Origin: Phyllobates terribilis
Taxonomy: Eukaryota
Assembly (NCBI RefSeq): GCF_046119375.1
Contig: NW_027362768.1
Location: 9,052,001-9,116,000, forward strand
Direction: 5' to 3'
Length of the DNA stretch: 64,000 nucleotides
Shown: piece by piece, positions 5,069-50,308 of the stretch
Layout: each line of letters begins with the position of its first letter
How positions within the stretch are numbered: position 1 is the stretch's first letter
Program-made: the position numbers and the translations under genes
The notes under the pieces: generated by a model
The model's input: the letters and a program-made list of their open reading frames with translations, nothing else
Databases searched by the model: none
Told to the model about the DNA's origin: nothing

Positions 5069-5108
<40 letters not shown>

Positions 5109-6355: not shown

Positions 6356-6399
<44 letters not shown>

Positions 6400-9165: not shown

Positions 9166-9492
9166 AACCCAGATACTAGGACATCAATAGGGCACACGTG
9201 GCCTAGGAAAATAAATTGCAAAGTGTCCACAATGTCCTATATAGACAATAATGATGTTTTTATTGGACTTGTCTCAAAGTAATTACGCGTTTCGAAACAC
9301 ATCTGTCTCCTTTTTCAAGGTTAGAGAGACATAAACCAAATCATGCCAAAGGCATCCACAGTGCTCTGAAATTAGGTGTTCTTGTGAGACAACTTCAAAT
9401 AACCACCAATATTTTGTTTACATCATTGGGGACACTTTGTAATTTTTGCTCCTGAACCACTTACCGCCTATGGATATCCTAGTATGTGGGTT
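9166..9492. repeat. Decayed inverted-repeat element with a Penelope-like motif inside
   Basis: AACCCAGATACTAGG...TTGCAAAGTGTCCACAATG (9166-9235) pairs imperfectly with CATTGGGGACACTTTGTAA...CCTAGTATGTGGGTT (to 9492); minus-strand CTTGAAAAAG...CGAAACGCGTA at 9283-9320. Confidence 0.5.
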
Positions 9493-9698
9493 TGTGAAAA
9501 ACCTAATCCAAACCATTGAACAAGTTTTTATACACCATCATTGAGCCTGGCAATTCAAAGTAAAGGATAAGATCATCAGGCAGCATCTCTCCTCGTTTAT
9601 TCATGCGCTACAGTAGAGTTGTTATGCATTGCACAACTACAGTGAAGTGAGCTTTCTACCTTTATGGGTCTAACACTATTTCTGCTCTGACGTCCTTA

Positions 9699-10538
9699 GG
9701 CTGTGTGCCCACATAGCATTTTTCAAGCGTTTATGCTGCGGAATTTCCGCAGCGGAAACGCTTGTGAAACGCTAGGTAATCCGCACCCCATGGTCCCCAA
9801 GGGGATTCCGCATGTTCTATGCACATGCTGCGGATTTTTCCGCAGCGTTTATGCTGCGTACAAAAATCCGCAGCATGTCATTTAATTTTGCGGAAGCGCA
9901 GCGGAACTCCCGCCATTGACTTGCATTGAGACGCACAGAAACCGCGACTGTACATTTTTACAAGCGGCTTCTATGAGTCTCTATGTGCGGATGGTACCCA
10001 GTTCTGGAGGAGAGGAGACTCTCATCCAGACCTGGGTACCATTGTACCTGTAAAAAAAGAATAAAATAACAAATAAAGTTTATATTCACCTGTCCGGCGG
10101 CTTGTCTCTGAATGCCGGCATCGCTTGAGGACCTGCGGTGACGTCACAGTCATGTGACCGCAGGCCCTTCACCGCTCTGTCTCGCGAGATGCCGGCATCC
10201 AGGAACCAGACAGGAAGCAGCGCTGCAGCCACGCCGGGACCTCGGGGGTGAGTATAGCTTTATTTGTTTTAATTTTTACGGTTCACACTGTATAAACCCA
10301 TGCCGTTTGTATGGATTTATACAGTGTGACCTAGTTGTCAAGCACTTTCCAAGTGATGCTATCACCTGGAAAGCGCTTGTCAATCTGCATGCAGAAACGC
10401 ATGTGAATCTGCATGTGGATCCGCATGTATTCTGCAGGAAAAACGCATGCACAATCTGCATGCGTTTTTTTCTGCCAGGGAGATGCAGAAATGCTGCAGA
10501 AATTTTCTGCTTCATTTCTGCATCGTGGGCACATAGCC
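9699..10538. mobile_element. PIF/Harbinger-type MITE
   Basis: TIRs GGCTGTGTGCCCACA / GTGGGCACATAGCC flanked by TTA and TAA; repeated GCGGA/TCCGC subterminal motifs. Confidence 0.65.
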
Positions 10539-10542
10539 TAAC

Positions 10543-11259
10543 TAGAAATGAGGGAATTTATTCAAGTGGAATTTAATTCATGAATTTTACAAAAATCTGA
10601 ATTCACTAAAATGGATATTTTTTTTCTAATTTGTTTCCTTATAGATTCATCAAAAGAGCAGCTGGCAGCTACTCCTTTGCTGAACCATAAAGAGCCATTA
10701 AAAGAATAAAAATTGAAAAAATACCTCTACTTACTTTACCACTCACCTCTTCAACCCCTCCGTTCCTCACCATCCCCTGCACATTCTTCAACGCATCTTC
10801 TTGTCACCACTGTGAGCACTGAAATTTCAGACCTATTCACATTAGGCAAGGACTTCCGGCTCTGCGGAGGCAAGGGACGGTTCTGAGCATCAGATCACAA
10901 TGTGTGCCGTGACTTTGTGTGTGCATCTTCACAACCGTCCTCCTCAGAGCTTGAAATCGCGGTCTAGAATGAAGAGACCAGGGATTTTAGCGCTTGTGGT
11001 GGTTATAAGGAGATGCGACAAGGACCATATAGGTGACAGTGAGGAGCAGATGGGCCTGAGATGTGAGCAGTAAGGTGAGTATAAGTATTTTTACATTTTT
11101 TTACACATTACGATTTTAATGCTGTGGGGTCTAAATAGACCCGAGAGTATCACAAGTGACATTCAATTTGCAGAGAATAACTTTGCTAAGAATTGAATTT
11201 CCCCCCAAAAATTTGCATAATCTGGCAAATATGAATTTTGCCAGATCCACTCATCTCTA
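10543..11259. mobile_element. Decayed hAT-type MITE
   Basis: Ends TAGAAATGAG / CTCATCTCTA resemble the hAT termini elsewhere in the window, but the flanking 8-mers do not match. Confidence 0.4.
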
Positions 11260-11356
11260 GTATTTACCTTATGAACACCTTCTCCTTTTGGTGTCAACCA
11301 ATTTTATGTCTCTGCATATTTTTCAGAGAAAGTTTCCTCCTATTATGGGCTGATTA

Positions 11357-12917
11357 CACTGTGTGCAGCATTATTAGGGAAATGAGTATTTTGATCACAT
11401 GATACTTTTTATACATGTTGTCCCACTCCAAGCTGCATAGGGTTGAGAGCCAACTACCATTTAAGTAAATCCGGTGATGTGCATCTCTGTAATGAGGAGG
11501 GGTGTTGACTAATGACATCAACACCCTATATAAATTGTGCTTAATTATTAGGCAACTTCCTTTCCTTTGGCAAAATGGGTCAGAAGAGAAATTTGACGGG
11601 CTCTGAAAAGTCCAAAATTGTGAGATGTCTTGCAGAGGGATGCAGCAGCCTTGAAATTTCCAAACTTTTGAAGCGTGATCACCGAACAATCAAGCGTTTC
11701 ATGGCAAATAGCCAACAGGGTCGCAAGAAGCATGTTGGCCAAAAAAGGCACAAAATAACAGCCCATGAATTGAGGAAAATCGAGCGTGAAGCAGCCAAGA
11801 CGCCATTCGCCACCAGTTTTGCCATATTTCAGAGCTGCAACGTTACTGGAGTATCCAAAAGCACAAGGTGTGCGATACTCAGGGACATGGCCAAGGTAAG
11901 TAAGGCTGAAAAACGACCACCTTTGAACAAGAAACATAAGATAAAACGTCAAGAATGGGCCAAGAAATATCTTAAGACTGATTTTTCAAAGGTTTTATGG
12001 ACTGATGAAATGAGAGTGACTCTTGATGGGCCAGATGGATGGGCCAGAGGCTGGATCAGTAAAGGGCAGAGAGCTCCACTCCGACTCAGACGCCAGCAAG
12101 GTGGAGGTGGGGTACTGGTATGGGCTGATATTATCAAAGATGAACTTGTGGGACCTTTTTGGGTTGAGCATGGAGTGAAGCTCAACTCCCAGACCTACTG
12201 CCAGTTTCTGGAAGACAACTTCTTCAAGCAGTGGTACAGGAAGTAGTCGGTATCGGTCAAGAAAAACATGATTTTCATGCAGGACAATGCTCCATCACAT
12301 GCATCCAACTACTCCACAGCGTGGCTGGCCAGTAAAGGTCTAAAAGAAGAAAAAATAATGATATGGCCCCCTTGTTCACCTGATCTGAACCCCATAGAGA
12401 ACCTGTGGTCCATCATAAAATGTGAGATCTACAGGGAGGGAAACAGTACACCTCTCGGAACAGTGTCTGGGAGGCTTTTGTGGCTGCTGCACACAATGTT
12501 GATCGAAAACAGATCAAGAAACTGACAGAATCTATGGATGGAATTCTGTTGAGTGTCATCATAAAGAAAGGTGGCTATATTGATCACTAATTTTTTTGGT
12601 TTTTGTTTTTGCATGTCAGAAATGTTTATTTCTAAATTTTGTGCACTGATACTGGTTTACCTGGTGAAAATAAACAAGTGAGATGGGATTATATTTGTTT
12701 TTTATTAAGTTGCCTAATAATTCTGCACAGTAATAGTTACCTGCACAAACAGATATCCTCCTAAGATAGCCAAATCTAAAAAAAAAACACTCCAACTTCC
12801 AAAAATATTAAGCTTGGATATTTATGAGTCTTATGGGTTGATTGAGGACATAGTTGTTGATGAAAAATAAAAATAATCCTCTAAAATACAACTTGCCTAA
12901 TAATTCTGCACACAGTG
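11357..12917 (+). mobile_element. Tc1/mariner-superfamily transposon, DD37E spacing
   Basis: TA|CACTGTGTGCAG.ATTATTAGG...CCTAATAATTCTGCACACAGTG|TA. Confidence 0.93.
11575..12590 (+). pseudogene. DD37E transposase (stop at 12244-46, frameshift near 12440)
   Basis: WTDEMR; QDNAPSH followed by 37 residues to E in NPIE (counted); ends KKGGYIDH*. Confidence 0.9.
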
Positions 12918-13349
12918 TATTATTTGCCTCATATGATATATGCCTTCCTCTGCATCATTATGTTAGGGTTATAAGTTGGACCTTTTTTTTCTTCCAATTT
13001 TTTGAAAATGCAAAAATGCAAAAAAAAAAGATGAGGAGAAAAAATAGCGCATGGATAGGGTTTTATCTGGTTGATAAATAATATTGTATCTCTTAGGCGT
13101 CGGGCATTTGCTGGATTTGAAATGGGTTCAAAACCATCAGTGGATTCTGTGGTCTCCCATTCTGGTCCTTCTGGGCCAGATGCTGCTCAGCATTATCATT
13201 GGTCCCAACGCCTAGCTGGTGCATGAGATGTACAGGTTGTCTCTTGGGTCTTTGTTCCTAGCAACATGAAGGATAGGTTGCGGAGGGAAACAGGGCTGCT
13301 GCAGCCTAAGTCCAGGATTCTCTGCACTGAGTATGCCCGTGACATGGCA

Positions 13350-13485
13350 GACCATGATTGGTGGTTTGGGAGTCAGCTGACCCGGTGACCTGGCATCGCC
13401 TGATTGGTCGCGGGTGACGTCACCAATAGTGCGACGGTGGGCAGGGCTTAATCTTTAAAAAGCCCGCCCACAAACATGGCGGTGG
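13350..13485 (+). promoter_or_regulatory. Dense promoter-like motif cluster in a repeat interrupted by hAT element 1
   Basis: GATTGG at 13356 and 13402, TGACGTCA 13415-22, CCAAT 13423, TTTAAAAA 13454, CCCGCCC 13463, AACATGGCGG 13473. Motif match only. Confidence 0.35.
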
Positions 13486-14459
13486 CTCTGATCATTGAGC
13501 AGTGATGGTGTTGTGTGGACGCTTGGTCGTTTGAGCTCCACGTGTGCTTTAACTTGATTCAGGCAGGTTTAGTGGGGGATAGGCAGCCTTAGATGGAGGG
13601 AGGCAGGTAGCTTCGTCTGACAGTCTGGCTCCGACAAAGGGGTCGCCATACACCCCGAGCAGTCTGCAGACGCCGTATTCCTGGAACCGCCTGTAAGCCA
13701 CGTGGAGAGATACTCCTCAGTCCGGTAGCACGCCGGCTGGGAGGACTTATACGCTGGCGTGTAGCACCCACGCATCCTACCGCCTGCTGTGTAGTCTCTG
13801 TGCTGTAACAGGACTACAGATACATTATTTATCGCACATATCTCGTGCAGTTAACGGAGAGAGTGCAAATCCCTATTCCCGTTCCGGTGTGCAGTAACAC
13901 GGAGGGGATTGTTATTTAAGTTGGTTGTTTTACCTTCTCACCCGGAAGGTGTTCAGCCGCAGTCCACCATACTGCATCGCGGATAGAGTTGAGCCACCCC
14001 CGTAGTGTTCGAGTTCGGTTCGTCGAACACCTGTATGTTCGCCGAACTGTTCATCGAACACCGTTAAAACCAATGGCAGGCAAACAAAAACACATAGAAA
14101 CACATAGAAAACACCTTCAAAGGTGTCCAAAACCTGACAAACTGCTCAGAAGACACAACTAACACATGAAAAACTGACAAGTACATATAGTCATGCGAAA
14201 AGAAAAGAGGTGAAGGAGTAAAAGGAGGCGGAGACACAGATATAGGCATGTCATGCCCTTCTAAAATCCAAAAAAGTGCGAAGCTGACACGGCCAGTCCT
14301 TTCCTGCCGGTGCGACCTCCGTGTTGCCGGGGTGGTGCCAGAGCTGTGGTGGACCCTGACGGCCAGCCCCCCTCTCCCAATACTGGTGCCTGTCCGCTGG
14401 TGGGTCGAGCGAGCCCCCCTGCGGTGGAGGCAGGTCTAAGCTTTTTAATTTAAATTGTC

Positions 14460-14729
14460 TCTGTAATTTGAATGAGTACACCTTAAATCCTTTTGCAAGG
14501 ATCTATTGGAGGGCAAGTTTGATGCCAGCAGCCGCGGGAATTCCAGCTCCAGTAGCGTCCACTAAAGCTGCTGCAGTTAAAAAGCTTTTATAAGGATCGA
14601 GCTTGGCGGTCCACCACAAGGCGTCCTACCGCCGTCCCATCCCCTGTGCCTTGGGGTGCCTCCCCGATGCTCTTCACTGAGTATCCCGTGGTCCCGAAGC
14701 ATTTCCTTTGAAAAAATTAAGTGTCCAAA
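14460..14729 (+). pseudogene. Decayed 18S rRNA fragment (530-loop region into V4) inside hAT element 1
   Basis: CTGTAATTTGAATGAGT...TTGGAGGGCAAGTTTGATGCCAGCAGCCGCGGGAATTCCAGCTCCAGTAGCG...GCTGCAGTTAAAAAGCT...CCCGAAGCATTTCCTTTGAAAAAATTAAGTGTCCAAA is colinear with the conserved vertebrate 18S sequence as recalled. Confidence 0.88.
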
Positions 14730-14937
14730 CTACAGGTGGTGTAGCTTGCTTAACAGGTGGGATAATCCGCTGACTAGCAGACACTGCTACTAGGTCCAAA
14801 GTATTTCCTGGGCTAGATGCAGTTAAAAATTTGTAATTAGATCTACAGGCGGTGGCTATTCCGCTGACTAGCAGACACTGCTACTAGGCCCAAAGTATTG
14901 CCTGGGCTAGATGCAGTTAAAAATTTGTAATTAGATA

Positions 14938-15690
14938 CTCTCGTTGGATGCTGAGAAAGCATTCCATAGAGTCTCCTGGCACGTCATATATTATTCTCTT
15001 AAAAAGCTTGGGGTAGGGGTCTAGGGGACCCTTTTATAGCCAAAATCATGGCCCTGTATCGCAATCCGTCAGCTAAGCTGAAGATTAATAGAACATTTTC
15101 ATCACCTTTCATAATCACCAATGAGACAAGGCAGGGATGTCCTCTGTCCCTTCTCTTATACATCCTAGTGATGGAGCACCTGCTCTCATCAATTCGCGAT
15201 AACCCCAATATTAGGTGGATTGAGGTGGGAGGCACCGAGTACAAGTGCTCTGCATTTGCTGATGATGTCCTAGTATATATCACTCAATCACATATATCCA
15301 TCCCTGCTGTTGTGGCTGAAATAGATCACTTTGTTACATGGTCAAATTTTAAAATCAATGCAGTGAAGTCTGAGGCCCTCGATGTCTCCCTCCCCAAATC
15401 CATACAGGATTCCATCCAGTCCAACTTTCCCTTTGCCTGGCCCTCACAGGGTATCAAATGCTTAGGAATTCGTATTCATAGAGACCTCTCCCGTCTACTT
15501 TATCTTAATTTTGGGCCCTTTATTGAACAACTCCATAAAGATCTTACTTCTTGGACGGTGAAGGATTTTTCCTGGTTCAGCAGAATAAGTATACTAAAAA
15601 TGAACATCCTACCTAAACTCTTATACCTCTTCCAAACTATTCCCGTGGTAATTCCCTCAAATTTTTGGAAAAGACTACGCAGTAGCTTTT
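14938..15690 (+). pseudogene. L1-clade LINE reverse-transcriptase fragment (hAT cargo)
   Basis: LSLDAEKAFHRVSW, TRQGCPLS, AFADDVLVY, FKINAVKSE, RISILKMNILPKLLYLFQ. Confidence 0.88.
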
Positions 15691-15945
15691 AGTCTCCCCA
15701 GGATGACACAGGTGGGGCAGATGGTGGTTGTCCCGGCCCGCTAGGCCGCATTGTAGCACAGTGAGCTTCGCACTGCAACTTATGCTTCATATCCATGTGA
15801 CGGTTCATGCATGAAGTACTCAAACTATGTATTTTTTGGCCTCTGCTTAGCTTTTGGTGACAAATGTTACAGATAACACGAGTTGGGTCATCCTTAGCGA
15901 TCTGAAAAAATGCACAGGCTATGCAAGGTTTAGAGCCCATGCGAC
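15690..15945 (-). pseudogene. Extra copy of the hAT BED zinc-finger segment
   Basis: KPCIACAFFQIAKDDPTRVICNICHQKLSRG...MNRHMDMKH is nearly identical to ~19550-19790 and ~41430-41670. Confidence 0.9.
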
Positions 15946-16325
15946 TCTGCTACTAGCAATACTATCAAATGATTGGCTGGGTTAGATGCAGAGCGTCTGG
16001 GTTTGGTTGGGGATCCCCACAGTCTGCCTAGGCTAGATGCAGTTAAAAATGCTCATTAGATACACAGGCGGTGCAGCTTGCTTCGCAGCTGGGCTAATAC
16101 ACCCAAAGTATTGGTAGACTCTATACTAAATAAGGAAGGATTCACTGACTGTGGTGGCCCCTCCGTGGGCCATGGTGATTGGTGGAGATTTGGTGGGTGA
16201 TTATAGGAGAAAGCTCCTTAATAGAGAAAGTTGGTGGATTTATACACGTGTACCAGCGGGTTTAAGCATCAGACATGATTTGATGTATCATTATGAGTGA
16301 TCATTTATAATTATTATTATATATA

Positions 16326-17956
16326 CAGTACAGACCAAAAGTTTGGACACACCTTCTCATTTAAAGATTTTTCTGTATTTTCATAACTATGAAAATTGTA
16401 CATTCACACTGCAGGCATCAAAACTATGAATTAACACATGTGGAATTATATACTTAACAAAAAAGTGTGAAACAACTTAAAATATGTCTTATATTCTAGG
16501 TTCTTCAAAGTAGCCACCTTTTGCTTTGATGACTGCTTTGCACACTCTTGGCATTCTCTTGATGAGCTTCAAGAGGTAGTCACCGGAAATGGTCTTCCAA
16601 CAATCTTGAAGGAGTTCCCAGAGATGCTTAGCACTTGTTGGCCCTTTTGCCTTCACTCGGCGGTCCAGCTCACCCCAAACCATCTCGATTGGGTTCAGGT
16701 CTGGTGACTGTGGAGGCCAGGTCATCTGGCGTAGCACCCCATCACTCTCCTACTTGGTCAAATAGCCCTTACACAGCCTGGAGGTGTGTTTGGGGTCATT
16801 GTCCTGTTGAAAAATAAATGATGGTCCAACTAAAAGCAAACCGGATGGAATAGCATGACGCTGCAAGATGCTGTGGTAGCCATGCTGGTTCAGTATGCCT
16901 TCAATTTTGAATAAATCCCCAACAGTGTCACCAGAAAAACACCACCACACCATCACACCTCCTCCTTCATGCTTCACGGTGGGAACCAGGCATGTAGAGT
17001 CCATCCGTTCACCTTTTCTGCGTCACACAAAGACACGGTGGTTGGAAACAAAGATCTAAAATTTAGACTCATCAGACCAAAGCACAGATTTCCACTGGTC
17101 TAATGTCCATTCCTTGTGTTCTTTAGCCCAAAAAAAGTCTCTTCTGCTTGTTGCCTGTCCTTAGCAGTGGTTTCCTTGCAGCTATTTTACCATGAAGGCC
17201 TGCTTCACAAAGTCTCCTCTTAACAGTTGTTGTAGAGATGTGTCTGCTGCTAGAACTCTGTGTGGCATTGACCTGGTCTCTAATCTGAGCTGCTGTTGAC
17301 CTGCGATTTCTGAGGCTGGTGACTCGGATAAACTTATCCTCAGAACAAGAGGTGACTCTTGGTCTTCCTTTCCTGGGGCGGTCCTCATGTGGGCCAGTTT
17401 CTTTGTAGCACTTGATGGTTTTTGCAACTGCACTTGGGGACACTTTCAAAGTTTGCCCAATTTTTCGGACTGACTGACCTTCATTTCATAAAGGAATGAT
17501 GGCCACTCGTTTTTCTTTACTTAGCTGCTTTTTTCTTGCCATAATACAAATTCTAACAGTCTATTCAGTAGGACTATCAGCTGTGTTTCCACCAGACTTC
17601 TGCACAACACAACTGATGGTCCCAACCCCATTTATAAGGCAAGAAATCCCACTTATTAAACCTGACAGGGCACACCTGTGAAGTGAAAACCATTTCCGGT
17701 GACTACCTCTTGAAGCTCATCAAGAGAATGCCAAGAGTGTGCAAAGCAGTCATCAAAGCAAAAGGTGGCTACTTTGAAGAACCTAGAATATAAGACATAT
17801 TTTCAGTTGTTTCACACTTTTTTGTTAAGTATATAATTCCACATGTGATAATTCATAGTTTTGATGCCTTCAGTGTGAATTTACAATTTTCATAGTTATG
17901 AAACTACAGAAAAATCTTTAAATGAGAAGGTATGTCCAAACTTTTGGTCTGTACTG
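16326..17956 (-). mobile_element. Tc1 transposon with ~268-bp TIRs, nested in hAT element 1
   Basis: TA|CAGTACAGACCAAAAGTTTGGACA...TGTCCAAACTTTTGGTCTGTACTG|TA. Confidence 0.95.
16489..17542 (-). pseudogene. Tc1 transposase, disrupted
   Basis: MARKKQLSKEK start; GRPRVT, QQDNDPKH, WPPQSPDLNPIE, KAKGGYF; multiple stops and frameshifts. Confidence 0.9.
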
Positions 17957-18084
17957 TATGTTCCTTTTTTCTTCTTTTCTTTTTCTTTTTGATTATTTAC
18001 ATTTATATGCATTGTTTCTATGCTATACGATTTTAACATGGTATGTGTGTTTAAATTTCTGATTAACTCAGCCTTGAACAGGTG

Positions 18085-20709
18085 CATAGCATGTAAATTA
18101 CCGGAATAGTCATGCTGATAATGGTATCGTCAGCACTAAACATCTTTGTCGCCATTTCAAAACTGTGCAGAAGGGTGCATAGGTCCCTGATCTGAGACCA
18201 CTCCTCCAGCGTGATTTGCCCCACCTCTGGATCCCGTTGGCCCAGGCAATACGTCAGAACGTACTGCACCAGGGCTTGTCAGTGCTGCCACAGTCGCTGC
18301 AACATGTGCAGAGTTGAATTCCACCGGGTAGGCACATCGCATTTTAGCCGGTGAAGTGGCAGGACCAATGATTTCTGTAGAGATGTAAGTCACTGAGCTG
18401 CGGGATGCGAATGGCGGAAGTGAGCACACAGTGACCGTGCCCTCTGCAGAAGGCCATCTTGTCCTGGATAGTGGGCTAAAAATTGCTGGACAACCAGGTT
18501 CAACACGTGAGCCATACAAGGCACGTGTGTGACATTGCCCCGGCGAAGGGCCTCACCGAGGTTTGCAGCATTGTCGCATACGGCCTTCCCTGGTTTCAGG
18601 TCCAGTAGAGACAACCATTCATGAAACTGGTTCTCCAGAGCTGACCACAACGCCTCAGCTGTGTGACTCACATTTCTCTGACATTTCAAAGTAAAAACCG
18701 ACCTGATGACGTTGAGCCCTGCTGCCAGCATAGTAAGGAGGTGTGCAGCATCCCTTCTGCGCAGTTAGAAAGCGTGTGGCATGACCAGAAAGGCTTTGGG
18801 TGCAGGTGGAGGACCGAGAGGAGGTTTAGGAGGCAGAAGCAGTGGAGGAACTTCTAGATAAAGACGATTGACGCACAACTCGTGGGGACAGCAAGACTTG
18901 GACAGCAGCCCCTTCTCCTGCTATCACCATAGTTACCCAGTGCCCAGTCAGCGACATGTAACGCCCCTGTCCATGCCTACTCGTTCAAGTGTCTGTGGTG
19001 AAATGCACCCTGTCACACACAGAGTTTCTCAAAGAAGCGGTGATGTTGTGTGCGACATGCTGGTGGAGCGCAGGCACACCTTTCTTTGAGAATTAGTGCC
19101 GACTGGGCATCTGGTACTGGGGCACTGCGACGGACATAAGGTATTGAAAATCCTCTGTGTCCACCAGGCGGAAAGGCAGTATTTCTGTAGCCAACAGCTT
19201 GCAGATGGTGAAATTCAACCTCTTAGCTTTGTCATGGCTTGGAGGAAATGGTCTTTTACTTGTCCACATCTGAGGGACCGAGGGCTGGCTGTTGTGCTAA
19301 GACCAGGTTGAGTACGGTGTCCCCGGCAAACTGCCGGTCTGTGAGGAAGATACAGGCGGACATGTTAGGTTGCCTTGATCCAAAGGTGGTGCTCTCGATG
19401 TCGGAGAGCGCTCAACACCAGCTGGTGTTTCCACCTCCAAAGAAAATGATGACCTGCCAATCACACTGGCTGTTGCGGGTAAAGAGGTGGCAGGTCTGCG
19501 TCCCAAAACAGGTGTGACTGCTGTCCCCCCAGTCACAGAGGATGAAGAGGCCGCAGATGCACAAGATGGGGCAGACGGTGGTTGGCCTGGCCCGCTAGGC
19601 CGCATTGTAGAACAGTGAGCTTCCCACTGCAACTTATGCTTCATGTCCATGTGACGGTTTATGCATGAAGTACTCAAACTATGGAATTTTTTGCCTCTAC
19701 TTAGCTTTTGGTGACAAATGTTACAGATAACACGAGTTGAGTCATCCTTATCGATCTGAAAAAATGCCCAGGCTATGCAAGGCTTAGCACCCATGTGACC
19801 TGAAGAGCCACCACGACTTGTGGTCAGAGGCAGAGTTGTGTTTGAGGATGCAGTTGTTGAAGTGCTTCCAGTACTACGTCTCTGTCCAGGAACGCGCAAC
19901 CTGACCTCGTCGTCTCTAGCATCCTCCTCCACCTCCTCTGCTGACCTCATCGACTGGCTGACTGTGGGTTGACAGTAAGTGGGATCTGCAACCTCGTCAT
20001 CATCACCCTGTGTGTTCTCACACCCGTCGTCCTCAGAGCCAACGTCTTCCTGCCCTGACAAAAAACACAAGTTGTCGCTCCAATCAGGTATTTGAGTCTC
20101 ATCATCGTCTTCCTCATTGTCTCCACCAACAGGAGTTACAGTTTGGGAACGAGGGTCTACATTATGGTCAGATCCTTCTGCGTCTGGTCCTGGATCCAAC
20201 TCATAAAGATTCTGGGCATCAGTGCAGATCATTTCCTCGTCTGGATTCACAGAAGCTCTGGAGCTGACCTCTGATTCCCAGGCTATAGCATGAGTAAACA
20301 GCTCTGCAGACTCAACCATCTGTTCTACTCCATACTCAGACGGGCAGCTGGAGACTTGGGAGTTGTGAGGAAGCAAGTGCGATTGGGGTGACACCTCTGA
20401 GGACTGGAGTATTTGTGATGTTGAAGTTGAGATGGAGGAGAGCCCACTTAAAGGAGCACTTGATATCCGTTGAAGCACCTGCTGTTTTTGTGCCTCATCT
20501 GGAATTTGTAGCGATTGGCGTGGCCGTAAGAAAGGGATCTTATCACATTGTCCGCTAAAAGAAGTAGACATCTTAGTTTGGCTGGAAGATGGTCTTTCTT
20601 CTGCAGATGTTACTGTTGCTTTAACACCTACCCCACGGACACCATCTTTTTTTTCCTTCCCAACACGCCTATTCCCCTTTCCACCAGCAGCAGGCCTTTT
20701 TCCACTCAT
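18085..20709 (-). pseudogene. hAT transposase of element 1, 3'-truncated with stops and a frameshift
   Basis: 470-aa ORF with BED finger, then TTDT, CDNAANL, CMAHVLNL and TRWNST; homology to element 2 stops after VIYML. Confidence 0.92.
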
Positions 20710-20822
20710 TTTGGTGGTTAACTAATTGACAACTCTGGAGTTGTTTGCTCAAAAAACGATGGATGGGAACCGAGCAGAGCTGAGTGGCCAAACTGTGGTA
20801 TTAGCCCAAAAGGATTGGCTGG

Positions 20823-22107
20823 GTTAGATGCAGTAAAACAATTTTATTGCATACACAGGTGGTAGAGCTTAGCATAGATGGACTAATAGAATGAGTCCCA
20901 CACACTGCTACAAGCCCAAAATTATTTTCCGAGCTAGATGCAGATAAAAATTATTTGTAATTTGCAAGCTGGTGGAGCTTAGTATAGATGGACTAATAGA
21001 ATAAGTCCCACACACTTCTACAAGCCCAAAATTATTTTCCGAGCTAGATGCAGATAAAAAATATTTGTAATTTGGAAGATGGTGGAGCTTAGTATAGATG
21101 GACTAATAGAATGAGTCCCACACACTGCTACAAGCCCAAAATTATTTTCCGAGCTAGATGCAGATAAAAGTTATTTGTAATTTGCAAGCTGGTGAAGCTT
21201 AGTATAGATGGCCTAATAGAATGAGTACCACACACTGCTACTATGCCCAAAATTATTTTCCAGACAAGATGCAGCTAAAAATTATTTGTAATTTGCAAGC
21301 TGGTGGAGCTTAGTATAGATGAACTAATAAAATAAGTCCCACACACTGCTACAAGCCCAAAATTATTTTCCGAGCTAGATGCAGATAAAAATTATTTGTA
21401 ATTTGCAAGCTGCTGGAGCATAGTATAGATGGCCTAATAGAATGAGTACCACACACTGCTACTATGCCCAAAATTATTTTCCAGACAAGATGCAGCTAAA
21501 AATTATTTGAAATTTGCAAGCTGGTGGAGCTTAGTATAGATGGCCTAATAGAATGAGTACCACACACTGCTACTATGCCCAAAATTATTTTCTGAGCTAG
21601 ATGCAGCTAAAAATTATTTGTAATTTGCAAGCTGGTGGAGCTTAGTATAGATCGACTAATAGAATAAGTCCCACACACTGCTACAAGCCCAAAATTATTT
21701 TCCGAGCTAGATGCAGATAAAAATCATTTGTAATTTGCAAGCTGGTGGAGTTTAGTATAGATGGACTAATAGAATAAATCCCACACACTGCTACAACCCC
21801 AAAATTATTTTCCGAGCTAGATGCAGCTAAAAATTATTTGTAATTTGCAAGCTGGTGGAGCTTAGTATAGATGGCCTAACAGAATGAGTACCACACACTG
21901 CTACTATGCCCAAAATTATTTTCCAGACAAGATGCAGCTAAAATTATTTGTAATTTGCAAGCTGGTGGAACTTAGTATAGATGGACTAATAGAATAAGTC
22001 CCACACACTGCTACAAGCCCAAAATTATTTTCCGAGCTAGATGCAGATAAAAATTATTTGTAATTTGCAAGTTGGTGGAGCTTAGTATAGATGGCCTAAC
22101 AGAATGA
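20823..22107. repeat. 110-111 bp tandem array, ~11-12 units, upstream of the element 1 transposase
   Basis: AGATGCAG recurs 12 times at 110-111 bp spacing. Confidence 0.93.
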
Positions 22108-23271
22108 TGCTATGCCCAAAAGGTTTTACTTGGCTAGGTGCAGTAAAAAAAATTGTATTCTATACACAGGTGGTGTAGCTTGCAACACAGATACGCTACT
22201 CCACTGACTAACACACACTGCAAGAGGCCAAAAAGGATTTGTTTTGCTAGATTTAGCCAAATGCTGTGAAAAACACTTGCACAGCACTGGCACAGACCTG
22301 CCTGGCAAAAAGTCCTAGGAAATGCTGTAACCTAGTCCTCAAAAGGACTTCAATTACAACTAGTCCCTACTCCCAAGCTGTCTATTTAAGAGCACAGACC
22401 TGCCTGCTAAAAGTCGTAGGAAATGCTGTTACCTAGTCCTCAAAAGGACTGCAATTACAAGTAGACCCTACTCCCAGCCTATCTATTTAAGAGCACAGAC
22501 CGGCCTGCTAAAAGTCGTAGGAAATGCTGTAACCTAGTCCTCAAAAGGACTGCAATCACAACTATTCCCTACTCCCAAGCTATCTATATATTTCTGAGAT
22601 AATTGGCTTGAAATTAACACTGAAAGTATAGCGCACACAGCAACAGCGGTGCCGTCTAACACGCAGCTGCAGCAGTGAGAAAATGGTGGCGACGGGGAAA
22701 ATGGCTGGGTCTTATAGGGCAAGGACATGTGACATACACTGCCAATAACACATGCTCTTGCTTGCGTGAAAAAAAGCACTTCGCTCCGTGTGTGCGCTGC
22801 TGATTGGCTGACAGATTGCACCTCCCCACTGTAAATGCGGGAAAAAGAAAAAAAAATGGAGATCTTCATTATACCTGCAGAGATCCATCCCATGCCCCTC
22901 CCCCCGCCCCGCTGTACACTAAAGCTGCGTATTAACATTGATTATCAGCATTACTGTGAAAAAATCCAGTTATGATTTTGCTGCACGAACAGTTATCGAA
23001 CATAACCTCGAACAGCCGGATTTTTTTCAAATCGTTCGTGTTCGCCGAATGGCTCGAACACCGCCCAAAACAGCTCGAATTTGAGATTGGCGAACAGTTC
23101 GAGTCGAACACCGCTCATCTATAATCGCGGACCCCGGGTTCGGTTGCTTTCCATTATTTAATAAAGTTGTTTGCAACCGTCCCTTTAACAGTATCAATAT
23201 ATGCTGACCTGATCCATGGATGAAAGGCTGCTGTGGATCAACGTGTGATTTCACCAGAAGAGCAAATAACA

Positions 23272-23424: not shown

Positions 23425-24098
23425 TTTTTATTTATTTTTTCAACGTTAAAAACTACAAAACAACTAGAGCAAGTGGAGATGAGACAACTATAGGAAAATG
23501 TAGTGTAGATACTTGATTCCCATTGGTGGGAACAATGCAAAAAATGTAAAATATGAAAAGAATAAATATGTGATCTCCAAGGGTTCATTTAAACGAACAG
23601 ATGATCATTTAAATGATGAACGATGCGATTATAATTCACAAGTGTTTATACAGGACAAGAATCATGAATGAAATGGGTGTATAGCAATTGTTAAATCATA
23701 ACTAGAGTTGAGCGTTGTTCGACTCGAACTGTTCGCCAATCTCAAATTCGAGCTGTTTTGGGCGGTGTTCGAGCCGTTCGGCGAACACGAACGATTTGAG
23801 AAAAATTCGGCTGTTCGAGGTTATGTTCGATAACTGTTCATGCACCAAAATCATAACTGGATTTTTTCTCAGTAATGATGAAAATTAATGTTAATACGCA
23901 GTTTGAGTGTACAGCGGGGTGGGGGGAGGGGCAGGGGATGGATCTCTGCAGGAATAATGAAGATCTCCATTTTTTTTCTCTTTCCCGCATTTACAGTGGG
24001 GAGGTGCAATCTGTCAGCCTATCAGCAGCGCACACACGGAGCGAAGTGCTTTATTTCACACAAGCAAGGGCATGTGTCATTGGCAGTGTATGTCACAT

Positions 24099-40518: not shown

Positions 40519-43500
40519 ATGAGTGGAAAAAGGCCTGCTGCTGGTGGAAAGGGGAATAGGCGTGTTGGGAAGGGGAAAAAAGGTTGTGTCCGTGGGGTAG
40601 GTGTTAAAGCAACAGTAACATCTGCAGAAGAAAGACCATCTTCCAGCCAAACTAAAATGTCTACTTCTTTTAGCGGACAATGTAATAAGATCCCTTTCTT
40701 ACAGCCACGCCAATCGCTACAAATTCCAGATGAGGCACAAAAACAGCAGGTGCTTCAACGGATATCAAGTGCTCCTTTAAGTGGGCTCTCCTCCACATCA
40801 ACTTCAACATCACAAATACTCCAGTCCTCAAAGGTGTCACCCCAATCGCACTTGCTTCCTCACAGCTCCCAAATCTCCAGCTGCCCGTCTGAGTATGAGG
40901 TAGAACAGATGGTTGAGTCTGCAGAGCTGTTTACTCATACTATAGCCTGGGAATCAGAGGTCTACTCCAGTGCTTCTGTGAATCCAGACGAGGAAATGAT
41001 CTGCAATGATGCCCAGAATCTTTATGAGTTGGATCCAGGACCAGACGCAGAAGGTTCTGACCATAATGTAGACCCTCATTCCCAAACTGTAACTCCTGTT
41101 GGTGGAGACAATGAGGAAGACGATGATGAGACTCAAATACCTGATTGGAGCGACAACTTTAGTTTTTTGTCAGGGCAGGAACAGGTTGGCTCTGAGGACG
41201 ACGGGTGTGATAACGCACAGGGTGATGATGATGAGGTTGGAGATCCCACTTACTGTCAACCTACAGTCAGCCAATAGATGAGGTCAGCAGAGGAGGTGGA
41301 GGAAGATGCTAGTGACGACGAGGTCAGGTTGCGCCTTCCTGGTCAGAGACGTAGTACTGGAAGCAAGTCAACAACTGCATCCTCAAACACAACTCTGCCT
41401 CTCACCACAAGTCGTGGTGGCTCTTCAGGTCGCATGGGTGCTAAGCCTTGCATAGCCTGGGCATTTTTTCAGATCAATAAAGATGACCCAACTCGTGTTA
41501 TCTGTAACATTTGTCAGCAAAAGCTAAGTAGAGGCCAAAAAATACATAGTTTGAGTACTTCATGCATGAACCGGCACATGGACATGAAGCATAAGTTGCA
41601 GTGGGAAGCTCAGTGTGCTACAATGCGGCCTAGCCGGCCGGGCCAACCACCATCTGCCATATCTTGTGCATCCGCGACCTCTTCATCCTCTGTGACTGGG
41701 GGGACAGCAGTCACACCTGTTTTGGGGCGCAGACCTGCCACCTCTTTACCCGCAACAGCCAGCGTGATTGGCAGGTCATCATTTTCTTTGGAGGTGGTAA
41801 CACCAGCTGGTGTTGAGCGCTGTCCGACATCGAAAGCACCACCTTTGGATCAAGGCAACCTAACATGTCCGCCTGCATCTTCCTCACAGACCGGCAGTTT
41901 GCCGGGGACACCCTTATCAACCCCGTCTAAGCACAATAGCCAGCCCTCGGTCCCTCAGATGTGGACAAGTAAAAGACCATTTCCTCCTAGCCATGAGAAA
42001 GCTAAGAGGTTGAATTTCACCATCTGCAAGCTCTTGGCTACAGAAATGCTGCCTTTCCGCCTGGTGGACACAGAGGATTTTCGAGACCTTATGTTCGTCG
42101 CAGTGCCCCAGTACCAGATGCCCAGTCGGCACTACTTCTCAAAGAAAGGTGTGCCTGCGCTCCACCAGCATGTCGCACACAACATCACCGCTTCTTTGAG
42201 AAACTCTGTGTGTGACAGGGTGCATTTCACCACAGACACTTGGACGAGTAGGCATGGACAGGGGCGTTACATGTCGCTGACTGGGCACTGGGTAACTATG
42301 GTGACAGCAGGACAAGGGGCTGCTGTCCAAGTCTTGCCGTCCCCACGAGTTGTGCGTCAATCCTCTTTATGTCAAAGTTCCTCCACTGCTTCTGCCTCCT
42401 CAACCTCCTCTCGGTCTTCCACCTGCACCCAAAGCCTGTCTGGTCATGCCACAAGCTTTCTAACTGCGCAGAAGGGATCCTGCACACCTCCTTACTAAGC
42501 TGGCAGTAGGGCTCAACGTCATCAGGCGGTTTTTACTTTGAAATGTCTGGGAAATGTGAGTCACACAGCTGAGGAGTTGTGGTCAGTTCTGGAGAACCAA
42601 TTTCATGAATGGTTGTCTCCACTGGACCTGAAACCAGGGAAGGCCGTGTGCGACAATGCTGCAAACCTGGGTGCGGCCCTTCGCCGGGGCAATGTCACAC
42701 ACGTGCCTTGTATGGCTCACGTGTTGAACCTGGTTGTCCAGCAATTTTTAGCCCACTATCCCAGACTAGATGGCCTTCTGCAGAGGGCACGGTCGCTGTG
42801 TGCTCACTTCCGCCGTTCGCATCCCGCAGCTCAGCGACTTACATCTCTACAGAAGTTGTTGGGCCTGCCACTTCACCGGCTAAAATGCGATGTGCCTACC
42901 CGGTGGAATTCAACTCTGCACATGTTGCAGCGACTGTGGCAGCACCGACAAGCCCTGGTGCAATACGTTCTGACGTATAGCCTGGGCCAACGAGATCCAG
43001 AGGTGGGGCAAATCACGCTGGAGGAGTGGTCTCAGATCAGGGACCTATGCACCCTTCTGCACAGTTTTGAAATGGCGACGAAGATGTTTAGTGCTGACGA
43101 TGCCATTATCAGCATGACTATTCCGGTGATTTACATGCTGGAGCACATGTTAAACAGAATTCGGAGTCAGGTGGTGGCACAAGAGGAGGTGGAGGAAGTA
43201 GAGGAGGAGGAGTTGTATGCGGAAGGGCTAACATCTGCAAGGTCCAGACGGTCGGCAGCACCAAGGCGGCAGGCATGTGAGGGTGGGGGAGATGGTTTTA
43301 CCAGGGTGCATGGTAGCAGCCAAACTAGTGAGGAAGGTGCAGGAGCCCAGGAAGAAGTGGAGGACGAACTGATGGAAGACTCATCAGATGAGGGAGACCT
43401 TGATCACATTTCTGTTGTGCGAGGTTGGGGGGAGAGGACAGAGGAAGGAAGCATGATTGTTACCTCGCCACCAACACAACAGGGACTTGGTGCTCCTGGA

Positions 43501-44181
43501 TGCGCAACACACATGAGTGCCTTCTTGCTGCACTACCTGCAACATGACCCTCGAATTGTGAGAATTAGAAATAATCCTGACTACTGGGTTGCCACACTGT
43601 TAGATCCCCGGTACAAAAGTAAATTTGCAGAAATTATTCCTGCCATAGAAAGGGATGCACGCATGCAGGAGTATCAGCAGAGACTGTTGCAGAATCTTAC
43701 ATGTGCTTTTCCACAAAACACCAGTGGTGCACGCAGTGAATCTCACAGTTCCAACTTGCCAACCGTGGGACCGTCAAGTGTTCAGCACTCAAACCGTAAC
43801 AGAACCACAGTATCTGCTGGTAACATCAATTTTGCGGAATCATTTCACCACTTTTTTAGCCCATCCTTTGCAAGGCCACAGGAGACAAGAAGTCTGACAC
43901 ATAGTCAACGCCTAGAGACGATGGTACAGGAGTATCTCCAAGTAAACATTGAAGCCATGACTGTGTCACTGGACCCTTGCTCTTTTTGGGCTTCCAATCT
44001 GGATAAATGGCCGGAGCTAGCCACTTACGCCTTGGAGATCTTGTCATGCCCCGCAGCCAGCGTTCTGTCTGAACGTGTGTTCAGCGCTGCTGGTGGTGTG
44101 CTGACAGATAAGCGCACGCGGCTCTCCACTGATAATGTAGACAGACTCACGTTCATAAAGATGAACAAATCATGGATCTGA
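40519..44181 (+). pseudogene. hAT (Ac-type, BED-finger) transposase: one 1220-codon frame with two premature stops
   Basis: Three track ORFs share one frame; TAG 41275-77 and TAA 42496-98. BED CxxC..H..H, TTDTW, CDNAANL, CMAHVLNL, DVPTRWNST, SVLSERVFS and the C-terminal dimerisation motif are all present. Confidence 0.93.
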
Positions 44182-44535: not shown

Positions 44536-44542
44536 GGGCTCC

Positions 44543-47922: not shown

Positions 47923-48036
47923 TATCTAATTACAAATTTTTAACTGCATCTAGCCCAGGAAATACTTTGTGCCTAGTAGCAGTGTCTGCTAGTCAGCGGA
48001 TTATCCCGGCTGTTAAGCAAGCTACACCACCTGTAG

Positions 48037-48304
48037 TTTGGACACTTAATTTTTTCAAAGGAAATGCTTCGGGACCACGGGATACTCAGTGAAGAGCATC
48101 AGGAGGCACCCCAAGGCATAGGGGCTGGGACTGGCAGTAGGATGCCTTGCGGTGGACAGCCGAGCTCGATCCTTATAAAAGATTTTTAACTGCAGCAGCT
48201 TTAGTGGACGCTACTGGAGCTGGAATTACGCGGCTGCTGGCATGAGACTTGCCCTCCAATAGATCCTTGTAAATGAATTTAAAGTGTATTCATTCAAATT
48301 AGAG
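48037..48304 (-). pseudogene. Decayed 18S rRNA fragment inside hAT element 2
   Basis: Reverse complement reads TTGGAGGGCAAGTCTCATGCCAGCAGCCGCGTAATTCCAGCTCCAGTAGCG...; same extent as 14460-14729. Confidence 0.88.
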
Positions 48305-50308
48305 AGACAATTTAAATTAAAAAGCTTAGAGCTGCCTCCACCACAGGGGGGCTCGCTCGACCCACCAGCGGACAGGCACCAGTATTGGGAGAGGGGGGCT
48401 GGCCGTCAGGGTTCACCGCGGCTCTGGCACAAACCCGGCGACACGGAGGTGGCACGGGCAGGAGCGGACTGAACGTGTCGGCTTCTCACTTTTTGGATTT
48501 TAGAAGGGCATGACATGCCTATATCTGTGTCTCCCCCTCCTTTTACTCCTCCACCTCTTTTCTTTTCGCATGACTATATGTACTTGTCACTTTTCCATGT
48601 GTTAGTTGTGTCTTCTGAGCAGTTTGTCAGGTTTTGAACACCTTTGAAGGTGTTTTCTATGTGTTTCTATGTGTTTTTGTTTGCCTGCCATTGGTTTTAA
48701 CGGTGTTCGAAGGTGCTCGATGAACAGTTCGACGAACAGTTCGGCGAACACACGGGTGTTCGACGAACCGAACTCGAACACTACGGGGGTGGCTCAACAC
48801 TAATCATAACATCAAGCTATGTACACTGTTTTCACACAGACAGATAATCTATCTTTTCCATTCTGTGAGTGCGCAGAAATCGGTCTGCACTCAGATGTCA
48901 TCCGAGTGCAGCCTCATAATTTCAATTCACTCATAGTCGTGTGCGATCCGAATATTGGATCAAACTCGGGCATGCAGCAACTTTTTTTTGGGACAGACTC
49001 TCAGGAAAAATCGGACACGTACACTGCCCCATAGACTAACATTTGTCCAAGAGCAGAAAAATAATTAAAATTCTTTTTTTTTTCTCTACCCTACCCCCCC
49101 AAAAAAAAATGATCAAAACATTGTTTGTCACTTGTAATGATATTAATAAAAATGTCAGTTCACCACCACTCAAAAAAAACCAAAACATTAACACATTTCC
49201 ATGGAAAACAGAAGAAAAACATTGCCACAAACCAATTTTTTTTGTAAACTTCAGATTTTTTCTCTCTCATTATTAAATAAAAAAAATCAACACAAGTTTG
49301 ATATCAACATAATCATACTGTGCTTGAGAATCATGTCAACAGGTCATTTTTATTTTTAATGGACGTAGATAAAACCCACCAAAAAAAATTAGGAATTGTG
49401 TTTATTGACTGCATTTTTATTCTGCACTGTTGGGAATGGATGGCAACAGAAGTTTTAAGATCTTAAAATCCTCAAAATTTAAATTTTCACTTAATTTAGT
49501 AAAAAAGGCAGAATCGGCACTGCCAATCTTTTTTTTCTCAGTATCACACTGCTGTCACCAACAAAATGGCTCTGCATTGTGATACTAAGCTGTAGACTCC
49601 CTCTCCATTTGTAGACTCCCAGAAGGTGGGGAGGAGTGACATCAGACGCATGCATGCAGATCCAGCCCTCTTTTACTGCAGTCATAATGCAAGCTAGCAC
49701 TACACTAGGTTTTCATGGCAAATGTCAGTAGCTGCTCCCCCTAGTGTTTAAAAGTTGAAAATATAAAAAAAAGTTTTTACATATTTTTTCATATTTCTAC
49801 CATTGAAAAATAAATATATTTTTTTGAATTAATACTTTAATTATTTTAAATTGTTGGAAAAAAAATTCATGACACAATCCATTAAAGTGCACTGAGCTAT
49901 GTAGTGAATACAAGTGATTATTCACAATCAGAGTGAGCATATAGATAAGCTATTGCCTAGTGTCATTATGCTATTCATGGGCACAACTCCATTGCATGTT
50001 TGGTGTGATTAAAGAAGCCTCAAGTTGTGCCAAATGTTTGCGATGTTTTCCAACTCCGGTATCCCACTGAATGAAATATATACAAGAAATTGACAAAAAA
50101 ATACCCTGACACTCCTGGCAATACTGCACTCTTTACTCAAATTAAGGTTGAAAATGGTAAAAGAGGAACATATTCAATTGAATAAAATATACTGTATTTA
50201 ATTGTAAAATACATGCTTCTTCTCTGAATGAGTCTATGTCAAACGGTTCGATCACACTATTGATGATTCTCTCATTATTATTATTATTTTATTATTATTT
50301 ATTATTAT

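What the first reader, a model, noticed from the sequence alone, without database searches (positions are those of the whole stretch)
14460..14729. 18S rRNA fragment carried as cargo by a DNA transposon (copy 1)
About 270 bp colinear with 18S rRNA, including the universal GCCAGCAGCCGCGG 530-loop motif, lie in the 3' arm of the hAT, antisense to the transposase. A mobile element amplifying rRNA sequence could seed dispersed rDNA pseudogenes and yield antisense-rRNA transcripts or small RNAs by read-through. It could also confound rDNA copy-number or universal-primer assays. These consequences are inference.
Basis: partly seen in the sequence, partly recalled or inferred. Interest (0 to 1): 0.8.

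Follow-up and report, generated by a model that had tools for sequence, protein, structure and literature searches.

The report
18S scrap inside a hAT transposon
A decayed 285-base piece of the 18S ribosomal RNA gene really is built into the tail of a very abundant cut-and-paste (hAT) transposon and has been copied around the genome with it. It looks like dead baggage, not a working RNA.

Summary
Rfam's eukaryotic SSU model matches 14438-14558 (+) at 73 bits and a second copy at 47997-48360 (-) at 67 bits. By eye the colinear 18S stretch is about 14446-14730: helices 16-18 with the 530 loop, into V4.

The core interpretation is supported. Both pieces lie inside complete hAT elements, each with its own perfect 8-bp target-site duplication:
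- Left element: 13984-23123, TSD ATCGCGGA.
- Right element: 23703-48802, TSD ATCATAAC.

Both have TAGAGTTGAGC termini and GTTCG-rich subterminal zones. The piece sits at the same offset from the 3' end (about 460 bp in one, 480 bp in the other), antisense to the transposase. These are two independent insertions, not a segmental palindrome as I first thought.

Contigs from public runs of the same species and two related species bridge hAT sequence into the 18S piece. One contig stops matching exactly at 13984.

The two copies differ by 6.6% in the piece and 3.7-9.7% in the flanks, and each carries its own lesion in the universal 530 loop. This is neutral decay.

New here: a GC-rich module directly upstream (14277-14441) has a separate, abundant GC-rich RNA source, possibly a pre-rRNA spacer. 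The neighbouring L1 reverse-transcriptase scrap is a separate insert.

This scan has already reported the same family on other DNA of this genome. Antisense transcripts, small RNAs and assay confounding remain untested.

The parts
13976..13983 (.). Target-site duplication ATCGCGGA of the left hAT (3' side)
   Evidence: Identical 8-mer at 23124-23131
13984..14276 (+). 3' terminus of the left hAT: TIR TAGAGTTGAGC, then a subterminal zone rich in GTTCG/CGAAC
   Evidence: The TIR is shared by all four ends. There are 7-9 GTTCG/CGAAC per terminal 120 bp, against 0.8 per kb in the whole window. Summed contig depth steps up about 15-fold at the 13976 bin, and an organism E contig stops matching at 13984
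14277..14441 (+). GC-rich cargo module (68% GC) of unidentified origin, present in both copies
   Evidence: No Rfam family. A 1,500-nt contig of depth about 900 in RNA?-runs of organisms A and D matches only 14314/14337-14441 and continues into unlike GC-rich sequence
14446..14730 (+). 18S rRNA pseudogene fragment (about helices 16-18 with the 530 loop, to mid V4), sense on +, antisense to the transposase
   Evidence: Rfam RF01960 at 73 and 71 bits. Real-18S contigs of RNA?-runs pile up only on 14528-14734
14731..14933 (+). Two units (period 94 bp) of the hAT's own repeat, related to its 110-bp satellite. The right copy has one unit
14934..15692 (+). L1-clade reverse-transcriptase fragment, truncated at both ends: a separate cargo piece
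   Evidence: ORF 15048-15692 matches human L1 ORF2p residues 632-841, E 9e-39. Pfam RVT_1. An LSLDAEKAF motif lies in another frame from about 14934
15689..15940 (-). 83-aa ORF that repeats the transposase's BED-finger region (left copy only)
   Evidence: 15702-15949 is 91% identical to 19556-19802
16323..17959 (.). Nested Tc1/mariner element with 275-bp inverted ends
   Evidence: 16323-16597 against 17959-17685 at 97.5%. Pfam HTH_Tnp_Tc3_2
18088..20709 (-). Remains of the left copy's hAT transposase gene. The BED finger is present and the C-terminal third is missing
   Evidence: Pfam zf-BED in ORF 19297-20709. The alignment to the right copy stops at 18088, equivalent to 43139
20803..22107 (.). 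110-bp tandem repeats upstream of the transposase (left copy, about 11 units)
23113..23131 (.). 5' TIR of the left hAT (reverse complement TATAGATGAGC, two changes from the consensus) and second TSD copy ATCGCGGA (23124-23131)
23695..23713 (.). TSD ATCATAAC (23695-23702) and 5' TIR TAGAGTTGAGC of the right hAT
40519..44181 (+). Right copy's transposase reading frame: 1,220 codons with two internal stops
   Evidence: Translation. Pfam zf-BED and Dimer_Tnp_hAT. Hermes transposase match, E 1.9e-19
48036..48319 (-). The same 18S fragment in the right hAT
   Evidence: Rfam 67 bits over 47997-48360. Alignment to copy 1. Coordinates mapped
48792..48810 (.). 3' TIR of the right hAT (reverse complement TAGTGTTGAGC) and second TSD copy ATCATAAC (48803-48810)

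Best explanation
The 18S-like stretch is a dead fragment of the host's small-subunit rRNA gene. It became fixed in the internal, dispensable part of the 3' arm of an autonomous-type hAT transposon, just inside the transposase-binding subterminal zone. It has since been carried along passively each time the element was cut and pasted.

The 3' arm is a patchwork. Reading inward from the 3' end it holds a GC-rich module, the 18S piece, the element's own repeat units, an L1 RT scrap, and in most copies a Tc1 piece. I infer that these are filler DNAs picked up by error-prone double-strand-break or gap repair with template switching, the same process that generates Ds-type and Pack-type elements.

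Shown:
- Both pieces lie within TSD-bounded hATs.
- Two independent insertions carry the piece at the same offset.
- The arrangement occurs in related species.
- The piece decays at the same rate as its flanks.

Inferred:
- The capture mechanism.
- The absence of function.
For: - Rfam SSU match above the gathering score in both copies.
- Perfect 8-bp TSDs that differ between the two elements: ATCGCGGA and ATCATAAC. All four ends share the 11-bp TIR.
- GTTCG/CGAAC is enriched about 70-fold in the terminal 120 bp of all four ends and absent from 14104-15700, so the piece lies outside that zone.
- The transposase has a BED finger and a hAT dimerisation domain and resembles Hermes. The right copy's frame has only two stops in 1,220 codons.
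- The two copies differ by 6.6% in the 18S piece and by 3.7-9.7% in the flanks.
- In the 43-nt universal core each copy has its own lesions. Copy 1 has GGGAAUU. Copy 2 has lost one G.
- Read laying: 43,481 contigs of a DNA run of the same species lie on the 2-kb stretch. The depth step coincides with the TIR. Contigs of organism D (14098-14493) and organism E (14087-14577) bridge hAT sequence, the GC module and the 18S piece. Organism A contigs bridge 14689-14842. No high-depth 'empty' form appears among the joints.
- The stretch between the 18S and L1 pieces is the hAT's own repeat.
Against: - The capture mechanism is inferred only from the patchwork structure. No donor junctions could be examined, because the species' own rDNA was not available to me.
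- Two copies are too few to exclude weak selection on the piece.
- Fixation of the piece in apparently nearly all copies, and in several species, would also fit a benefit to the element.
- RNA?-run contigs contain the hAT-borne version (for example 14441-14598 at depth 286 in X10). Transcription is therefore possible, and a role for it is not excluded.
Confidence: 0.82

Rival explanations
1. The two 18S pieces are the arms of one large inverted segmental duplication centred near 23350. On this reading they say nothing about transposition.
For: Self-comparison shows 13984-23123 colinear, in inverted order, with 23703-48802 at 91-95% identity.
Against: Each arm is bounded by its own perfect 8-bp duplication, and the two duplications differ. 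Both arms start and end with the TIR. The 579 bp between them is not part of either arm. The same terminus at 13984 is seen in a contig of another species.
Confidence: 0.02
2. The 18S piece and the L1 RT piece entered together as one chimeric retrocopy. An L1 reverse transcriptase would have switched template from L1 RNA to 18S rRNA, and the product then landed in the hAT.
For: The 18S sense strand and the L1 sense strand are the same (+), with 18S upstream of L1. That order is what template switching gives. Chimeras of L1 with non-coding RNAs are known; the abstract of PMC13174262, listed, reports them.
Against: - The two pieces are separated by one or two units of the hAT's own repeat.
- The L1 piece is cut at both ends (ORF2p equivalent of about 595-841) and has no 3' end or poly(A).
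- The module directly upstream of the 18S piece comes from a different GC-rich RNA or locus.
Confidence: 0.06
3. The piece is kept because it is useful.
(a) It could serve as a landing pad for a LINE that inserts specifically at the 530-loop motif, a partnership like Tx1L in Tx1D of Xenopus.
(b) It could provide an antisense-18S tract in hAT transcripts that affects their fate or feeds small-RNA silencing.
For: - The piece appears fixed in the family and is shared by related species.
- One organism E contig starts matching exactly at 14541, inside GCCGCGG(G/T)AA|TTCC, preceded by unlike AT-rich sequence.
Against: - Both pieces in this window are unoccupied.
- The motif itself is damaged differently in each copy.
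- Divergence in the piece equals that of the flanks.
- Being a target of a LINE does not by itself show a benefit to the hAT.
- No strand or small-RNA data were available.
Confidence: 0.1

Closest known systems
Ac/Ds-type and Pack-TYPE DNA transposons (Pack-MULE, Pack-CACTA, hAT examples) that carry captured host DNA
   Same: A TIR and TSD element with foreign host fragments in its internal region, multiplied by transposition. The patchwork of several unrelated fragments is typical (PMC8903248, PMC6379663 and PMC3260210, abstracts listed).
   Different: Pack-TYPE elements are defined as non-autonomous plant elements carrying coding DNA. Here the carrier is a transposase-coding animal hAT and the cargo is non-coding rRNA gene sequence.
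Pokey (piggyBac) of Daphnia, with rDNA IGS-derived repeats
   Same: A DNA transposon that holds rDNA-derived sequence internally. It is the only DNA-transposon entry in the review table of rDNA-derived TE sequences (PMC10946416, Table 2).
   Different: Pokey's rDNA-derived sequence is spacer repeats upstream of the transposase, and Pokey lives in the 28S gene. Here the cargo is 18S coding sequence downstream of the transposase, and both copies sit in non-rDNA targets.
SINE28 (28S-derived), and 5S-derived SINE3 and Cassandra
   Same: Mobile elements that multiply rRNA-gene-derived sequence (PMC4994717; PMC10946416).
   Different: Those are retroelements. In the 5S cases the captured part supplies a Pol III promoter, which is a function. 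No such role is apparent for an internal 18S fragment. No 18S-derived entry appears in that table.
Tx1L LINE inside Tx1D DNA transposon of Xenopus laevis (Garrett, Knutzon and Carroll 1989; from my own knowledge, not read here)
   Different: Not seen in this window, where both 18S pieces are uninterrupted. Only a single contig junction at the motif in another species hints at it.

Membership tests
hAT superfamily DNA transposon | 8-bp target-site duplication | tested here: met
   ATCGCGGA at 13976-13983 and 23124-23131. ATCATAAC at 23695-23702 and 48803-48810
hAT superfamily DNA transposon | Short terminal inverted repeats with subterminal short repeats | tested here: met
   The 11-bp TIR TAGAGTTGAGC is found at all four ends with 0-2 changes. 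There are 7-9 GTTCG/CGAAC in each terminal 120 bp
hAT superfamily DNA transposon | Transposase with the hAT C-terminal dimerisation domain (often with an N-terminal BED finger) | tested here: met
   PF05699 at E 1.5e-15 and PF02892 at E 1.2e-10 in the right copy. Hermes transposase match, E 1.9e-19. The left copy lacks the C-terminal part
Eukaryotic 18S rRNA gene (Rfam RF01960) | Score above the family's gathering threshold | tested here: met
   73.1, 71 and 67 bits against a threshold of 50
Eukaryotic 18S rRNA gene (Rfam RF01960) | Full-length gene with intact universal core, that is, a working rRNA | tested here: not met
   Only about model positions 470-780 of 1831 are present. The 530-loop core carries substitutions or a deletion that differ between the copies. 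It is a pseudogene fragment
Pack-TYPE transposon | Non-autonomous element whose interior is captured host coding DNA | tested here: not met
   The carrier encodes its own, recently inactivated transposase, and the cargo is rRNA-gene and TE scraps. It works like a Pack-type capture but is not a member by that definition
L1-mediated chimeric retrocopy (RNA template switch) | Direct junction of the foreign RNA copy to a 3'-complete L1 part with a poly(A) tail | tested here: not met
   hAT repeat units lie between the pieces. The L1 piece ends at the ORF2p equivalent of residue 841, with no poly(A)
rDNA-resident transposon (R elements, Pokey) | Insertion within an rRNA gene, with rDNA on both flanks | tested here: not met
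   The flanks outside both TSDs are not rDNA. Rfam finds only the two internal pieces in 64 kb

The most novel reading that the evidence does not exclude
The hAT-borne 18S piece, present in very many copies, is the habitual landing site of a LINE that recognises the universal 530-loop motif. On this reading the DNA transposon supplies the retrotransposon with thousands of harmless copies of an otherwise lethal target, a frog parallel to Tx1L/Tx1D. The adjoining GC-rich module would then show that the cargo was copied from the rDNA unit or pre-rRNA, not from mature 18S.
Probability: 0.25. Interest if true: 0.6.

Novelty: new member of a known kind. Interest (0 to 1): 0.33.

Why it matters
Capture of host DNA by cut-and-paste transposons is well known. 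However, a 2024 review's table of rDNA-derived transposon sequences lists no 18S case and only one DNA transposon, Pokey (PMC10946416). My literature searches found no report of this family.

Practical points:
- In this genome, a stretch of 18S from about the 530 loop to mid V4 exists in far more transposon-borne copies than true genes. Depth-based rDNA copy estimates, read mapping to 18S and rRNA-depletion statistics over that stretch should be treated with care.
- The family gives a dated, multi-copy, neutrally decaying sample of an ultra-conserved sequence.
- The family may serve as a decoy target for 18S-specific LINEs.

Tried and rejected
1. Segmental palindrome. This was my first reading after the self-comparison. 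I rejected it once each arm showed its own TSD.

2. One chimeric 18S-L1 retrocopy. A YRxxSLLN-like translation just after the 18S end looked like L1 RT motif 1. The alignment shows that stretch is the hAT's own satellite-type unit, so the resemblance is chance.

3. GC-rich module as the 18S 5' domain. I recalled a likeness to the V2 region of vertebrate 18S. No tool supports it: Rfam is silent, and the matching contig in RNA?-runs has depth about 900, not about 100,000, and runs on into non-18S sequence.

4. Identifying the GC module through the scan's index gave a blank, which means nothing.

5. Alignment to the species' own 18S was not done. No eukaryotic rDNA reference is reachable with these tools. 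I chose not to scan metagenome contigs for vertebrate-type 18S, because such hits would probably be human, which I may not keep.

6. Read laying did not refuse the stretch. It silently drops human-like records, so gaps in real-18S coverage (for example 14459-14527) prove nothing. All runs were contigs, so strand, ends and copy number could not be read.

7. Organism names were coded. 'Poison frog' comes only from earlier notes and is not verified here.

Full report
**Observation**

Rfam's eukaryotic small-subunit rRNA model (RF01960) matches the window twice above its gathering score of 50 bits:
- 14438-14558 (+): 73.1 bits, E 1.6e-17.
- 47997-48360 (-): 67 bits, E 1.2e-15.

A search restricted to 13984-15100 gives 71 bits, E 1.3e-18, and no other RNA family at E up to 1.

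The alignments show colinearity from about model position 470-505 (AAUGAG...UUAAAU), through GGAGGGCAAGU..UGCCAGCAGCCGCGG.AAUUCCAGCUCC (helix 18, the 530 loop), GUUAAAAAGCU and the V4 variable region, to UUUGAAAAAAUUA-AGUGUCCAAAC near model position 780. I place the piece at about 14446-14730. The second copy maps to 48036-48319 on the minus strand.

**What carries it**

A self-comparison showed 13984-23123 colinear, in inverted order, with 23703-48802 at 91-95% identity. I first read this as one segmental palindrome.
- The left arm is flanked by ATCGCGGA at 13976-13983 and 23124-23131.
- The right arm is flanked by ATCATAAC at 23695-23702 and 48803-48810.

Further hAT signatures:
- All four ends carry the 11-bp terminus TAGAGTTGAGC with 0-2 changes.
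- The pentamer GTTCG/CGAAC occurs 7-9 times in each terminal 120 bp, against 0.8 per kb in the window and none in 14104-15700.
- The right copy's transposase frame (40519-44181, +) has 1,220 codons with two stops. It has a BED finger and the hAT dimerisation domain and resembles Hermes transposase at E 1.9e-19.
- The left copy (transposase on the minus strand, BED ORF 19297-20709) has lost the C-terminal third.

So the window holds two separate insertions of one hAT family, head to head and 579 bp apart. The 18S piece starts 462 bp (left) and 483 bp (right) from the 3' terminus and is antisense to the transposase in both.

**Anatomy of the 3' arm (left copy, + strand, reading inward from the 3' end)**

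| Coordinates | Feature | Evidence |
|---|---|---|
| 13984-14276 | TIR and subterminal zone | |
| 14277-14441 | 68% GC module | |
| 14446-14730 | 18S piece | |
| 14731-14933 | Two 94-bp units; the right copy has one | |
| 14934-15692 | L1-clade RT fragment | |
| 15689-15940 (-) | 83-aa ORF repeating the element's own BED region | |
| 16323-17959 | Nested Tc1/mariner | |

- The 94-bp units clearly align with the element's own 110-bp satellite.
- The RT fragment includes ORF 15048-15692, which matches human L1 ORF2p residues 632-841 at E 9e-39. An LSLDAEKAF motif lies in another frame from about 14934.
- Because hAT repeat units separate the 18S and L1 pieces, and the L1 piece is cut at both ends without a poly(A) tail, the two are separate inserts. 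They are not one template-switch retrocopy.

**Is the piece under constraint?**

The two copies differ by 6.6% in the 18S piece. They differ by 3.7% in the subterminal zone, 9.7% in the GC module, 5.6% in the repeat unit and 4.7% at the L1 start.

In the 43-nt universal core, copy 1 has GUUUGAUGCC and GGGAAUU. Copy 2 has GUCUCAUGCC and has lost one G of GCCGCGG. Only the G-to-A change in UGGUGCC is shared.

The letters held by most contigs of the DNA run (C at 14519 and 14521, G kept at 14537, and a minority with the copy-2 form) show at least two sublineages, each with its own damage. This is what neutral decay from a near-canonical captured sequence looks like.

**Other copies and other species**

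The look-up of sequencing runs found the stretch in DNA runs of organism A (0.60-0.68 of sampled words, two studies). It found parts of it in organisms B-E (0.16-0.27). All names are coded.

Read laying used X4 (DNA, organism A), X10 (RNA?, organism A), X19 (RNA?, organism D) and X21 (RNA?, organism E). All were Logan contigs, laid at likeness 85 or more. Results:
- 43,481 X4 contigs lie on the 2-kb stretch.
- Summed depth rises about 15-fold at the bin that contains the TIR. It stays at that level through the 18S piece to about 15541. The tool warns that this depth is not a copy number.
- Bridging contigs: organism D 14098-14493 (394 nt), organism E 14087-14577 (500 nt), and organism A 14186-14331, 14441-14598 and 14689-14842.
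- One organism E contig stops matching exactly at 13984.
- The joints listed are rare single-contig deletions. No abundant 18S-free form appears.
- In the RNA?-runs only 14528-14734 reaches very high depth: 8,000-148,000, against tens to a few thousand for most other hAT bins (the terminal bins 13976-14182 reach 5,900-23,000 in X10). These contigs carry G at 14683. This is the real 18S, and it shows that the piece resembles the hosts' own gene.
- In the DNA run those bins are no deeper than the neighbouring hAT bins.
- After 15541 most copies continue as the right copy does (the loose-end consensus equals the sequence from 46100 downward). The left copy is therefore a minority structural variant there.

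**New detail: the GC-rich module**

A 1,500-nt contig of depth about 900 in X19, and a matching one in X10, aligns only to 14337-14441 (14314-14441 in X10). It differs mostly by C where the hAT copy has T. It continues on both sides into GC-rich sequence unlike the window, and those flanks differ between organisms A and D.

The module therefore has its own abundant, fast-evolving, GC-rich transcribed source, about 20 times deeper than the hAT neighbours in X19 and roughly 100 times less deep than 18S. A pre-rRNA spacer would fit. This is a guess and could not be tested.

**Mechanism**

Shown: the piece is inside the mobile unit, outside the terminal motif zone, and has been transposed at least twice in this window and many more times in the genome and in relatives.

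Inferred: it entered with other scraps as filler during error-prone repair of a break in the element, by gap repair with template switching as for Ds and Pack-type elements. It persists because that part of the element is not needed in cis. A possible CAGG microhomology at the 18S/unit junction (14731-14737) is too short to count as evidence.

**Comparison with what is known**

- A 2024 review's table of rDNA-derived TE sequences lists 5S-derived SINEs and Cassandra, SINE28 (28S), and Pokey (IGS repeats, piggyBac). It has no 18S case and no hAT (PMC10946416).
- Two poison-frog genome papers mention hAT abundance but no rRNA cargo (PMC11152451 and PMC6278860).
- The kind of event, host DNA captured by a TIR transposon, is well known (PMC8903248, PMC6379663 and PMC3260210, abstracts listed).
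- I class this as a new member of a known kind.

**Earlier work of this scan**

The same family with the same cargo has been noted many times on other DNA of this genome and followed up at least twice (s1-230066 and s1-230072). Other notes mention an 'unknown GC-rich module' (s1-209134) and a Tx1-clade LINE inserted at the 530-loop motif (s1-230036).

My results agree with those notes, and I tested the cargo claim independently here. Both pieces in this window are unoccupied by any LINE. The only hint is one organism E contig that begins matching at 14541, inside GCCGCGG(G/T)AA|TTCC.

- Dispersed 18S pseudo-fragments: shown.
- Antisense transcripts or small RNAs: untested. Contigs carry no strand, and three AATAAA/ATTAAA hexamers lie between the transposase stop and the piece in the right copy.
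- Confounding of primer assays: doubtful, since the piece ends near model position 780.
- Confounding of depth-based counts: plausible.

**Not done**

I did not align the piece to the species' own 18S, because no reference was reachable. I avoided a metagenome scan that would probably return human rDNA.

Noticed in passing
window 14277-14441 (and the right copy, about 48324-48490, minus strand): The GC-rich cargo module next to the 18S piece matches a separate 1,500-nt, depth-900 contig in RNA?-runs of two species. That contig's flanks are GC-rich and unlike the window. It may be a pre-rRNA spacer.
   Followed up: partly
window 14540|14541: A contig of another species (organism E) begins matching exactly inside the 530-loop motif GCCGCGG(G/T)AA|TTCC, preceded by AT-rich unlike sequence.
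   Followed up: no
window 15689-15940 (-): An open 83-aa ORF in the left hAT's 3' arm repeats the transposase's BED-finger region (91% DNA identity to 19556-19802). The right copy has no counterpart.
   Followed up: no
window 20803-22107 and 27450-40421: The hAT's 110-bp tandem repeat upstream of the transposase has about 11 units in the left copy and about 13 kb in the right copy. Related units also lie in the 3' arm (14731-14933, 15975-16100, 44262-44537).
   Followed up: partly
window 24097-26927 and 50283-53137: A G-rich APE+RT LINE is nested in the 5' region of the right hAT (ORF 24805-26985, minus strand). A fuller copy with a 1,058-aa ORF lies at 50514-53690. The two are 88.7% identical.
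   Followed up: no
window 46553-47765: A 1.2-kb insertion, in the right copy only, lies within the L1 scrap (at the point equivalent to left-copy 15090-15094). Part of it (46713-46863) recurs at 63617-63767.
   Followed up: no
window 4942-5697 and 5767-6526: Inverted repeats of 760 bp at 97.4% identity, with a 69-bp spacer: a near-perfect 1.6-kb palindrome.
   Followed up: no
window 13976-14182 in run X10: In the RNA?-run of organism A the terminal 200 bp of the hAT are 10-50 times deeper than the rest of the arm. Short derivatives sharing the terminus may be common in transcripts.
   Followed up: no
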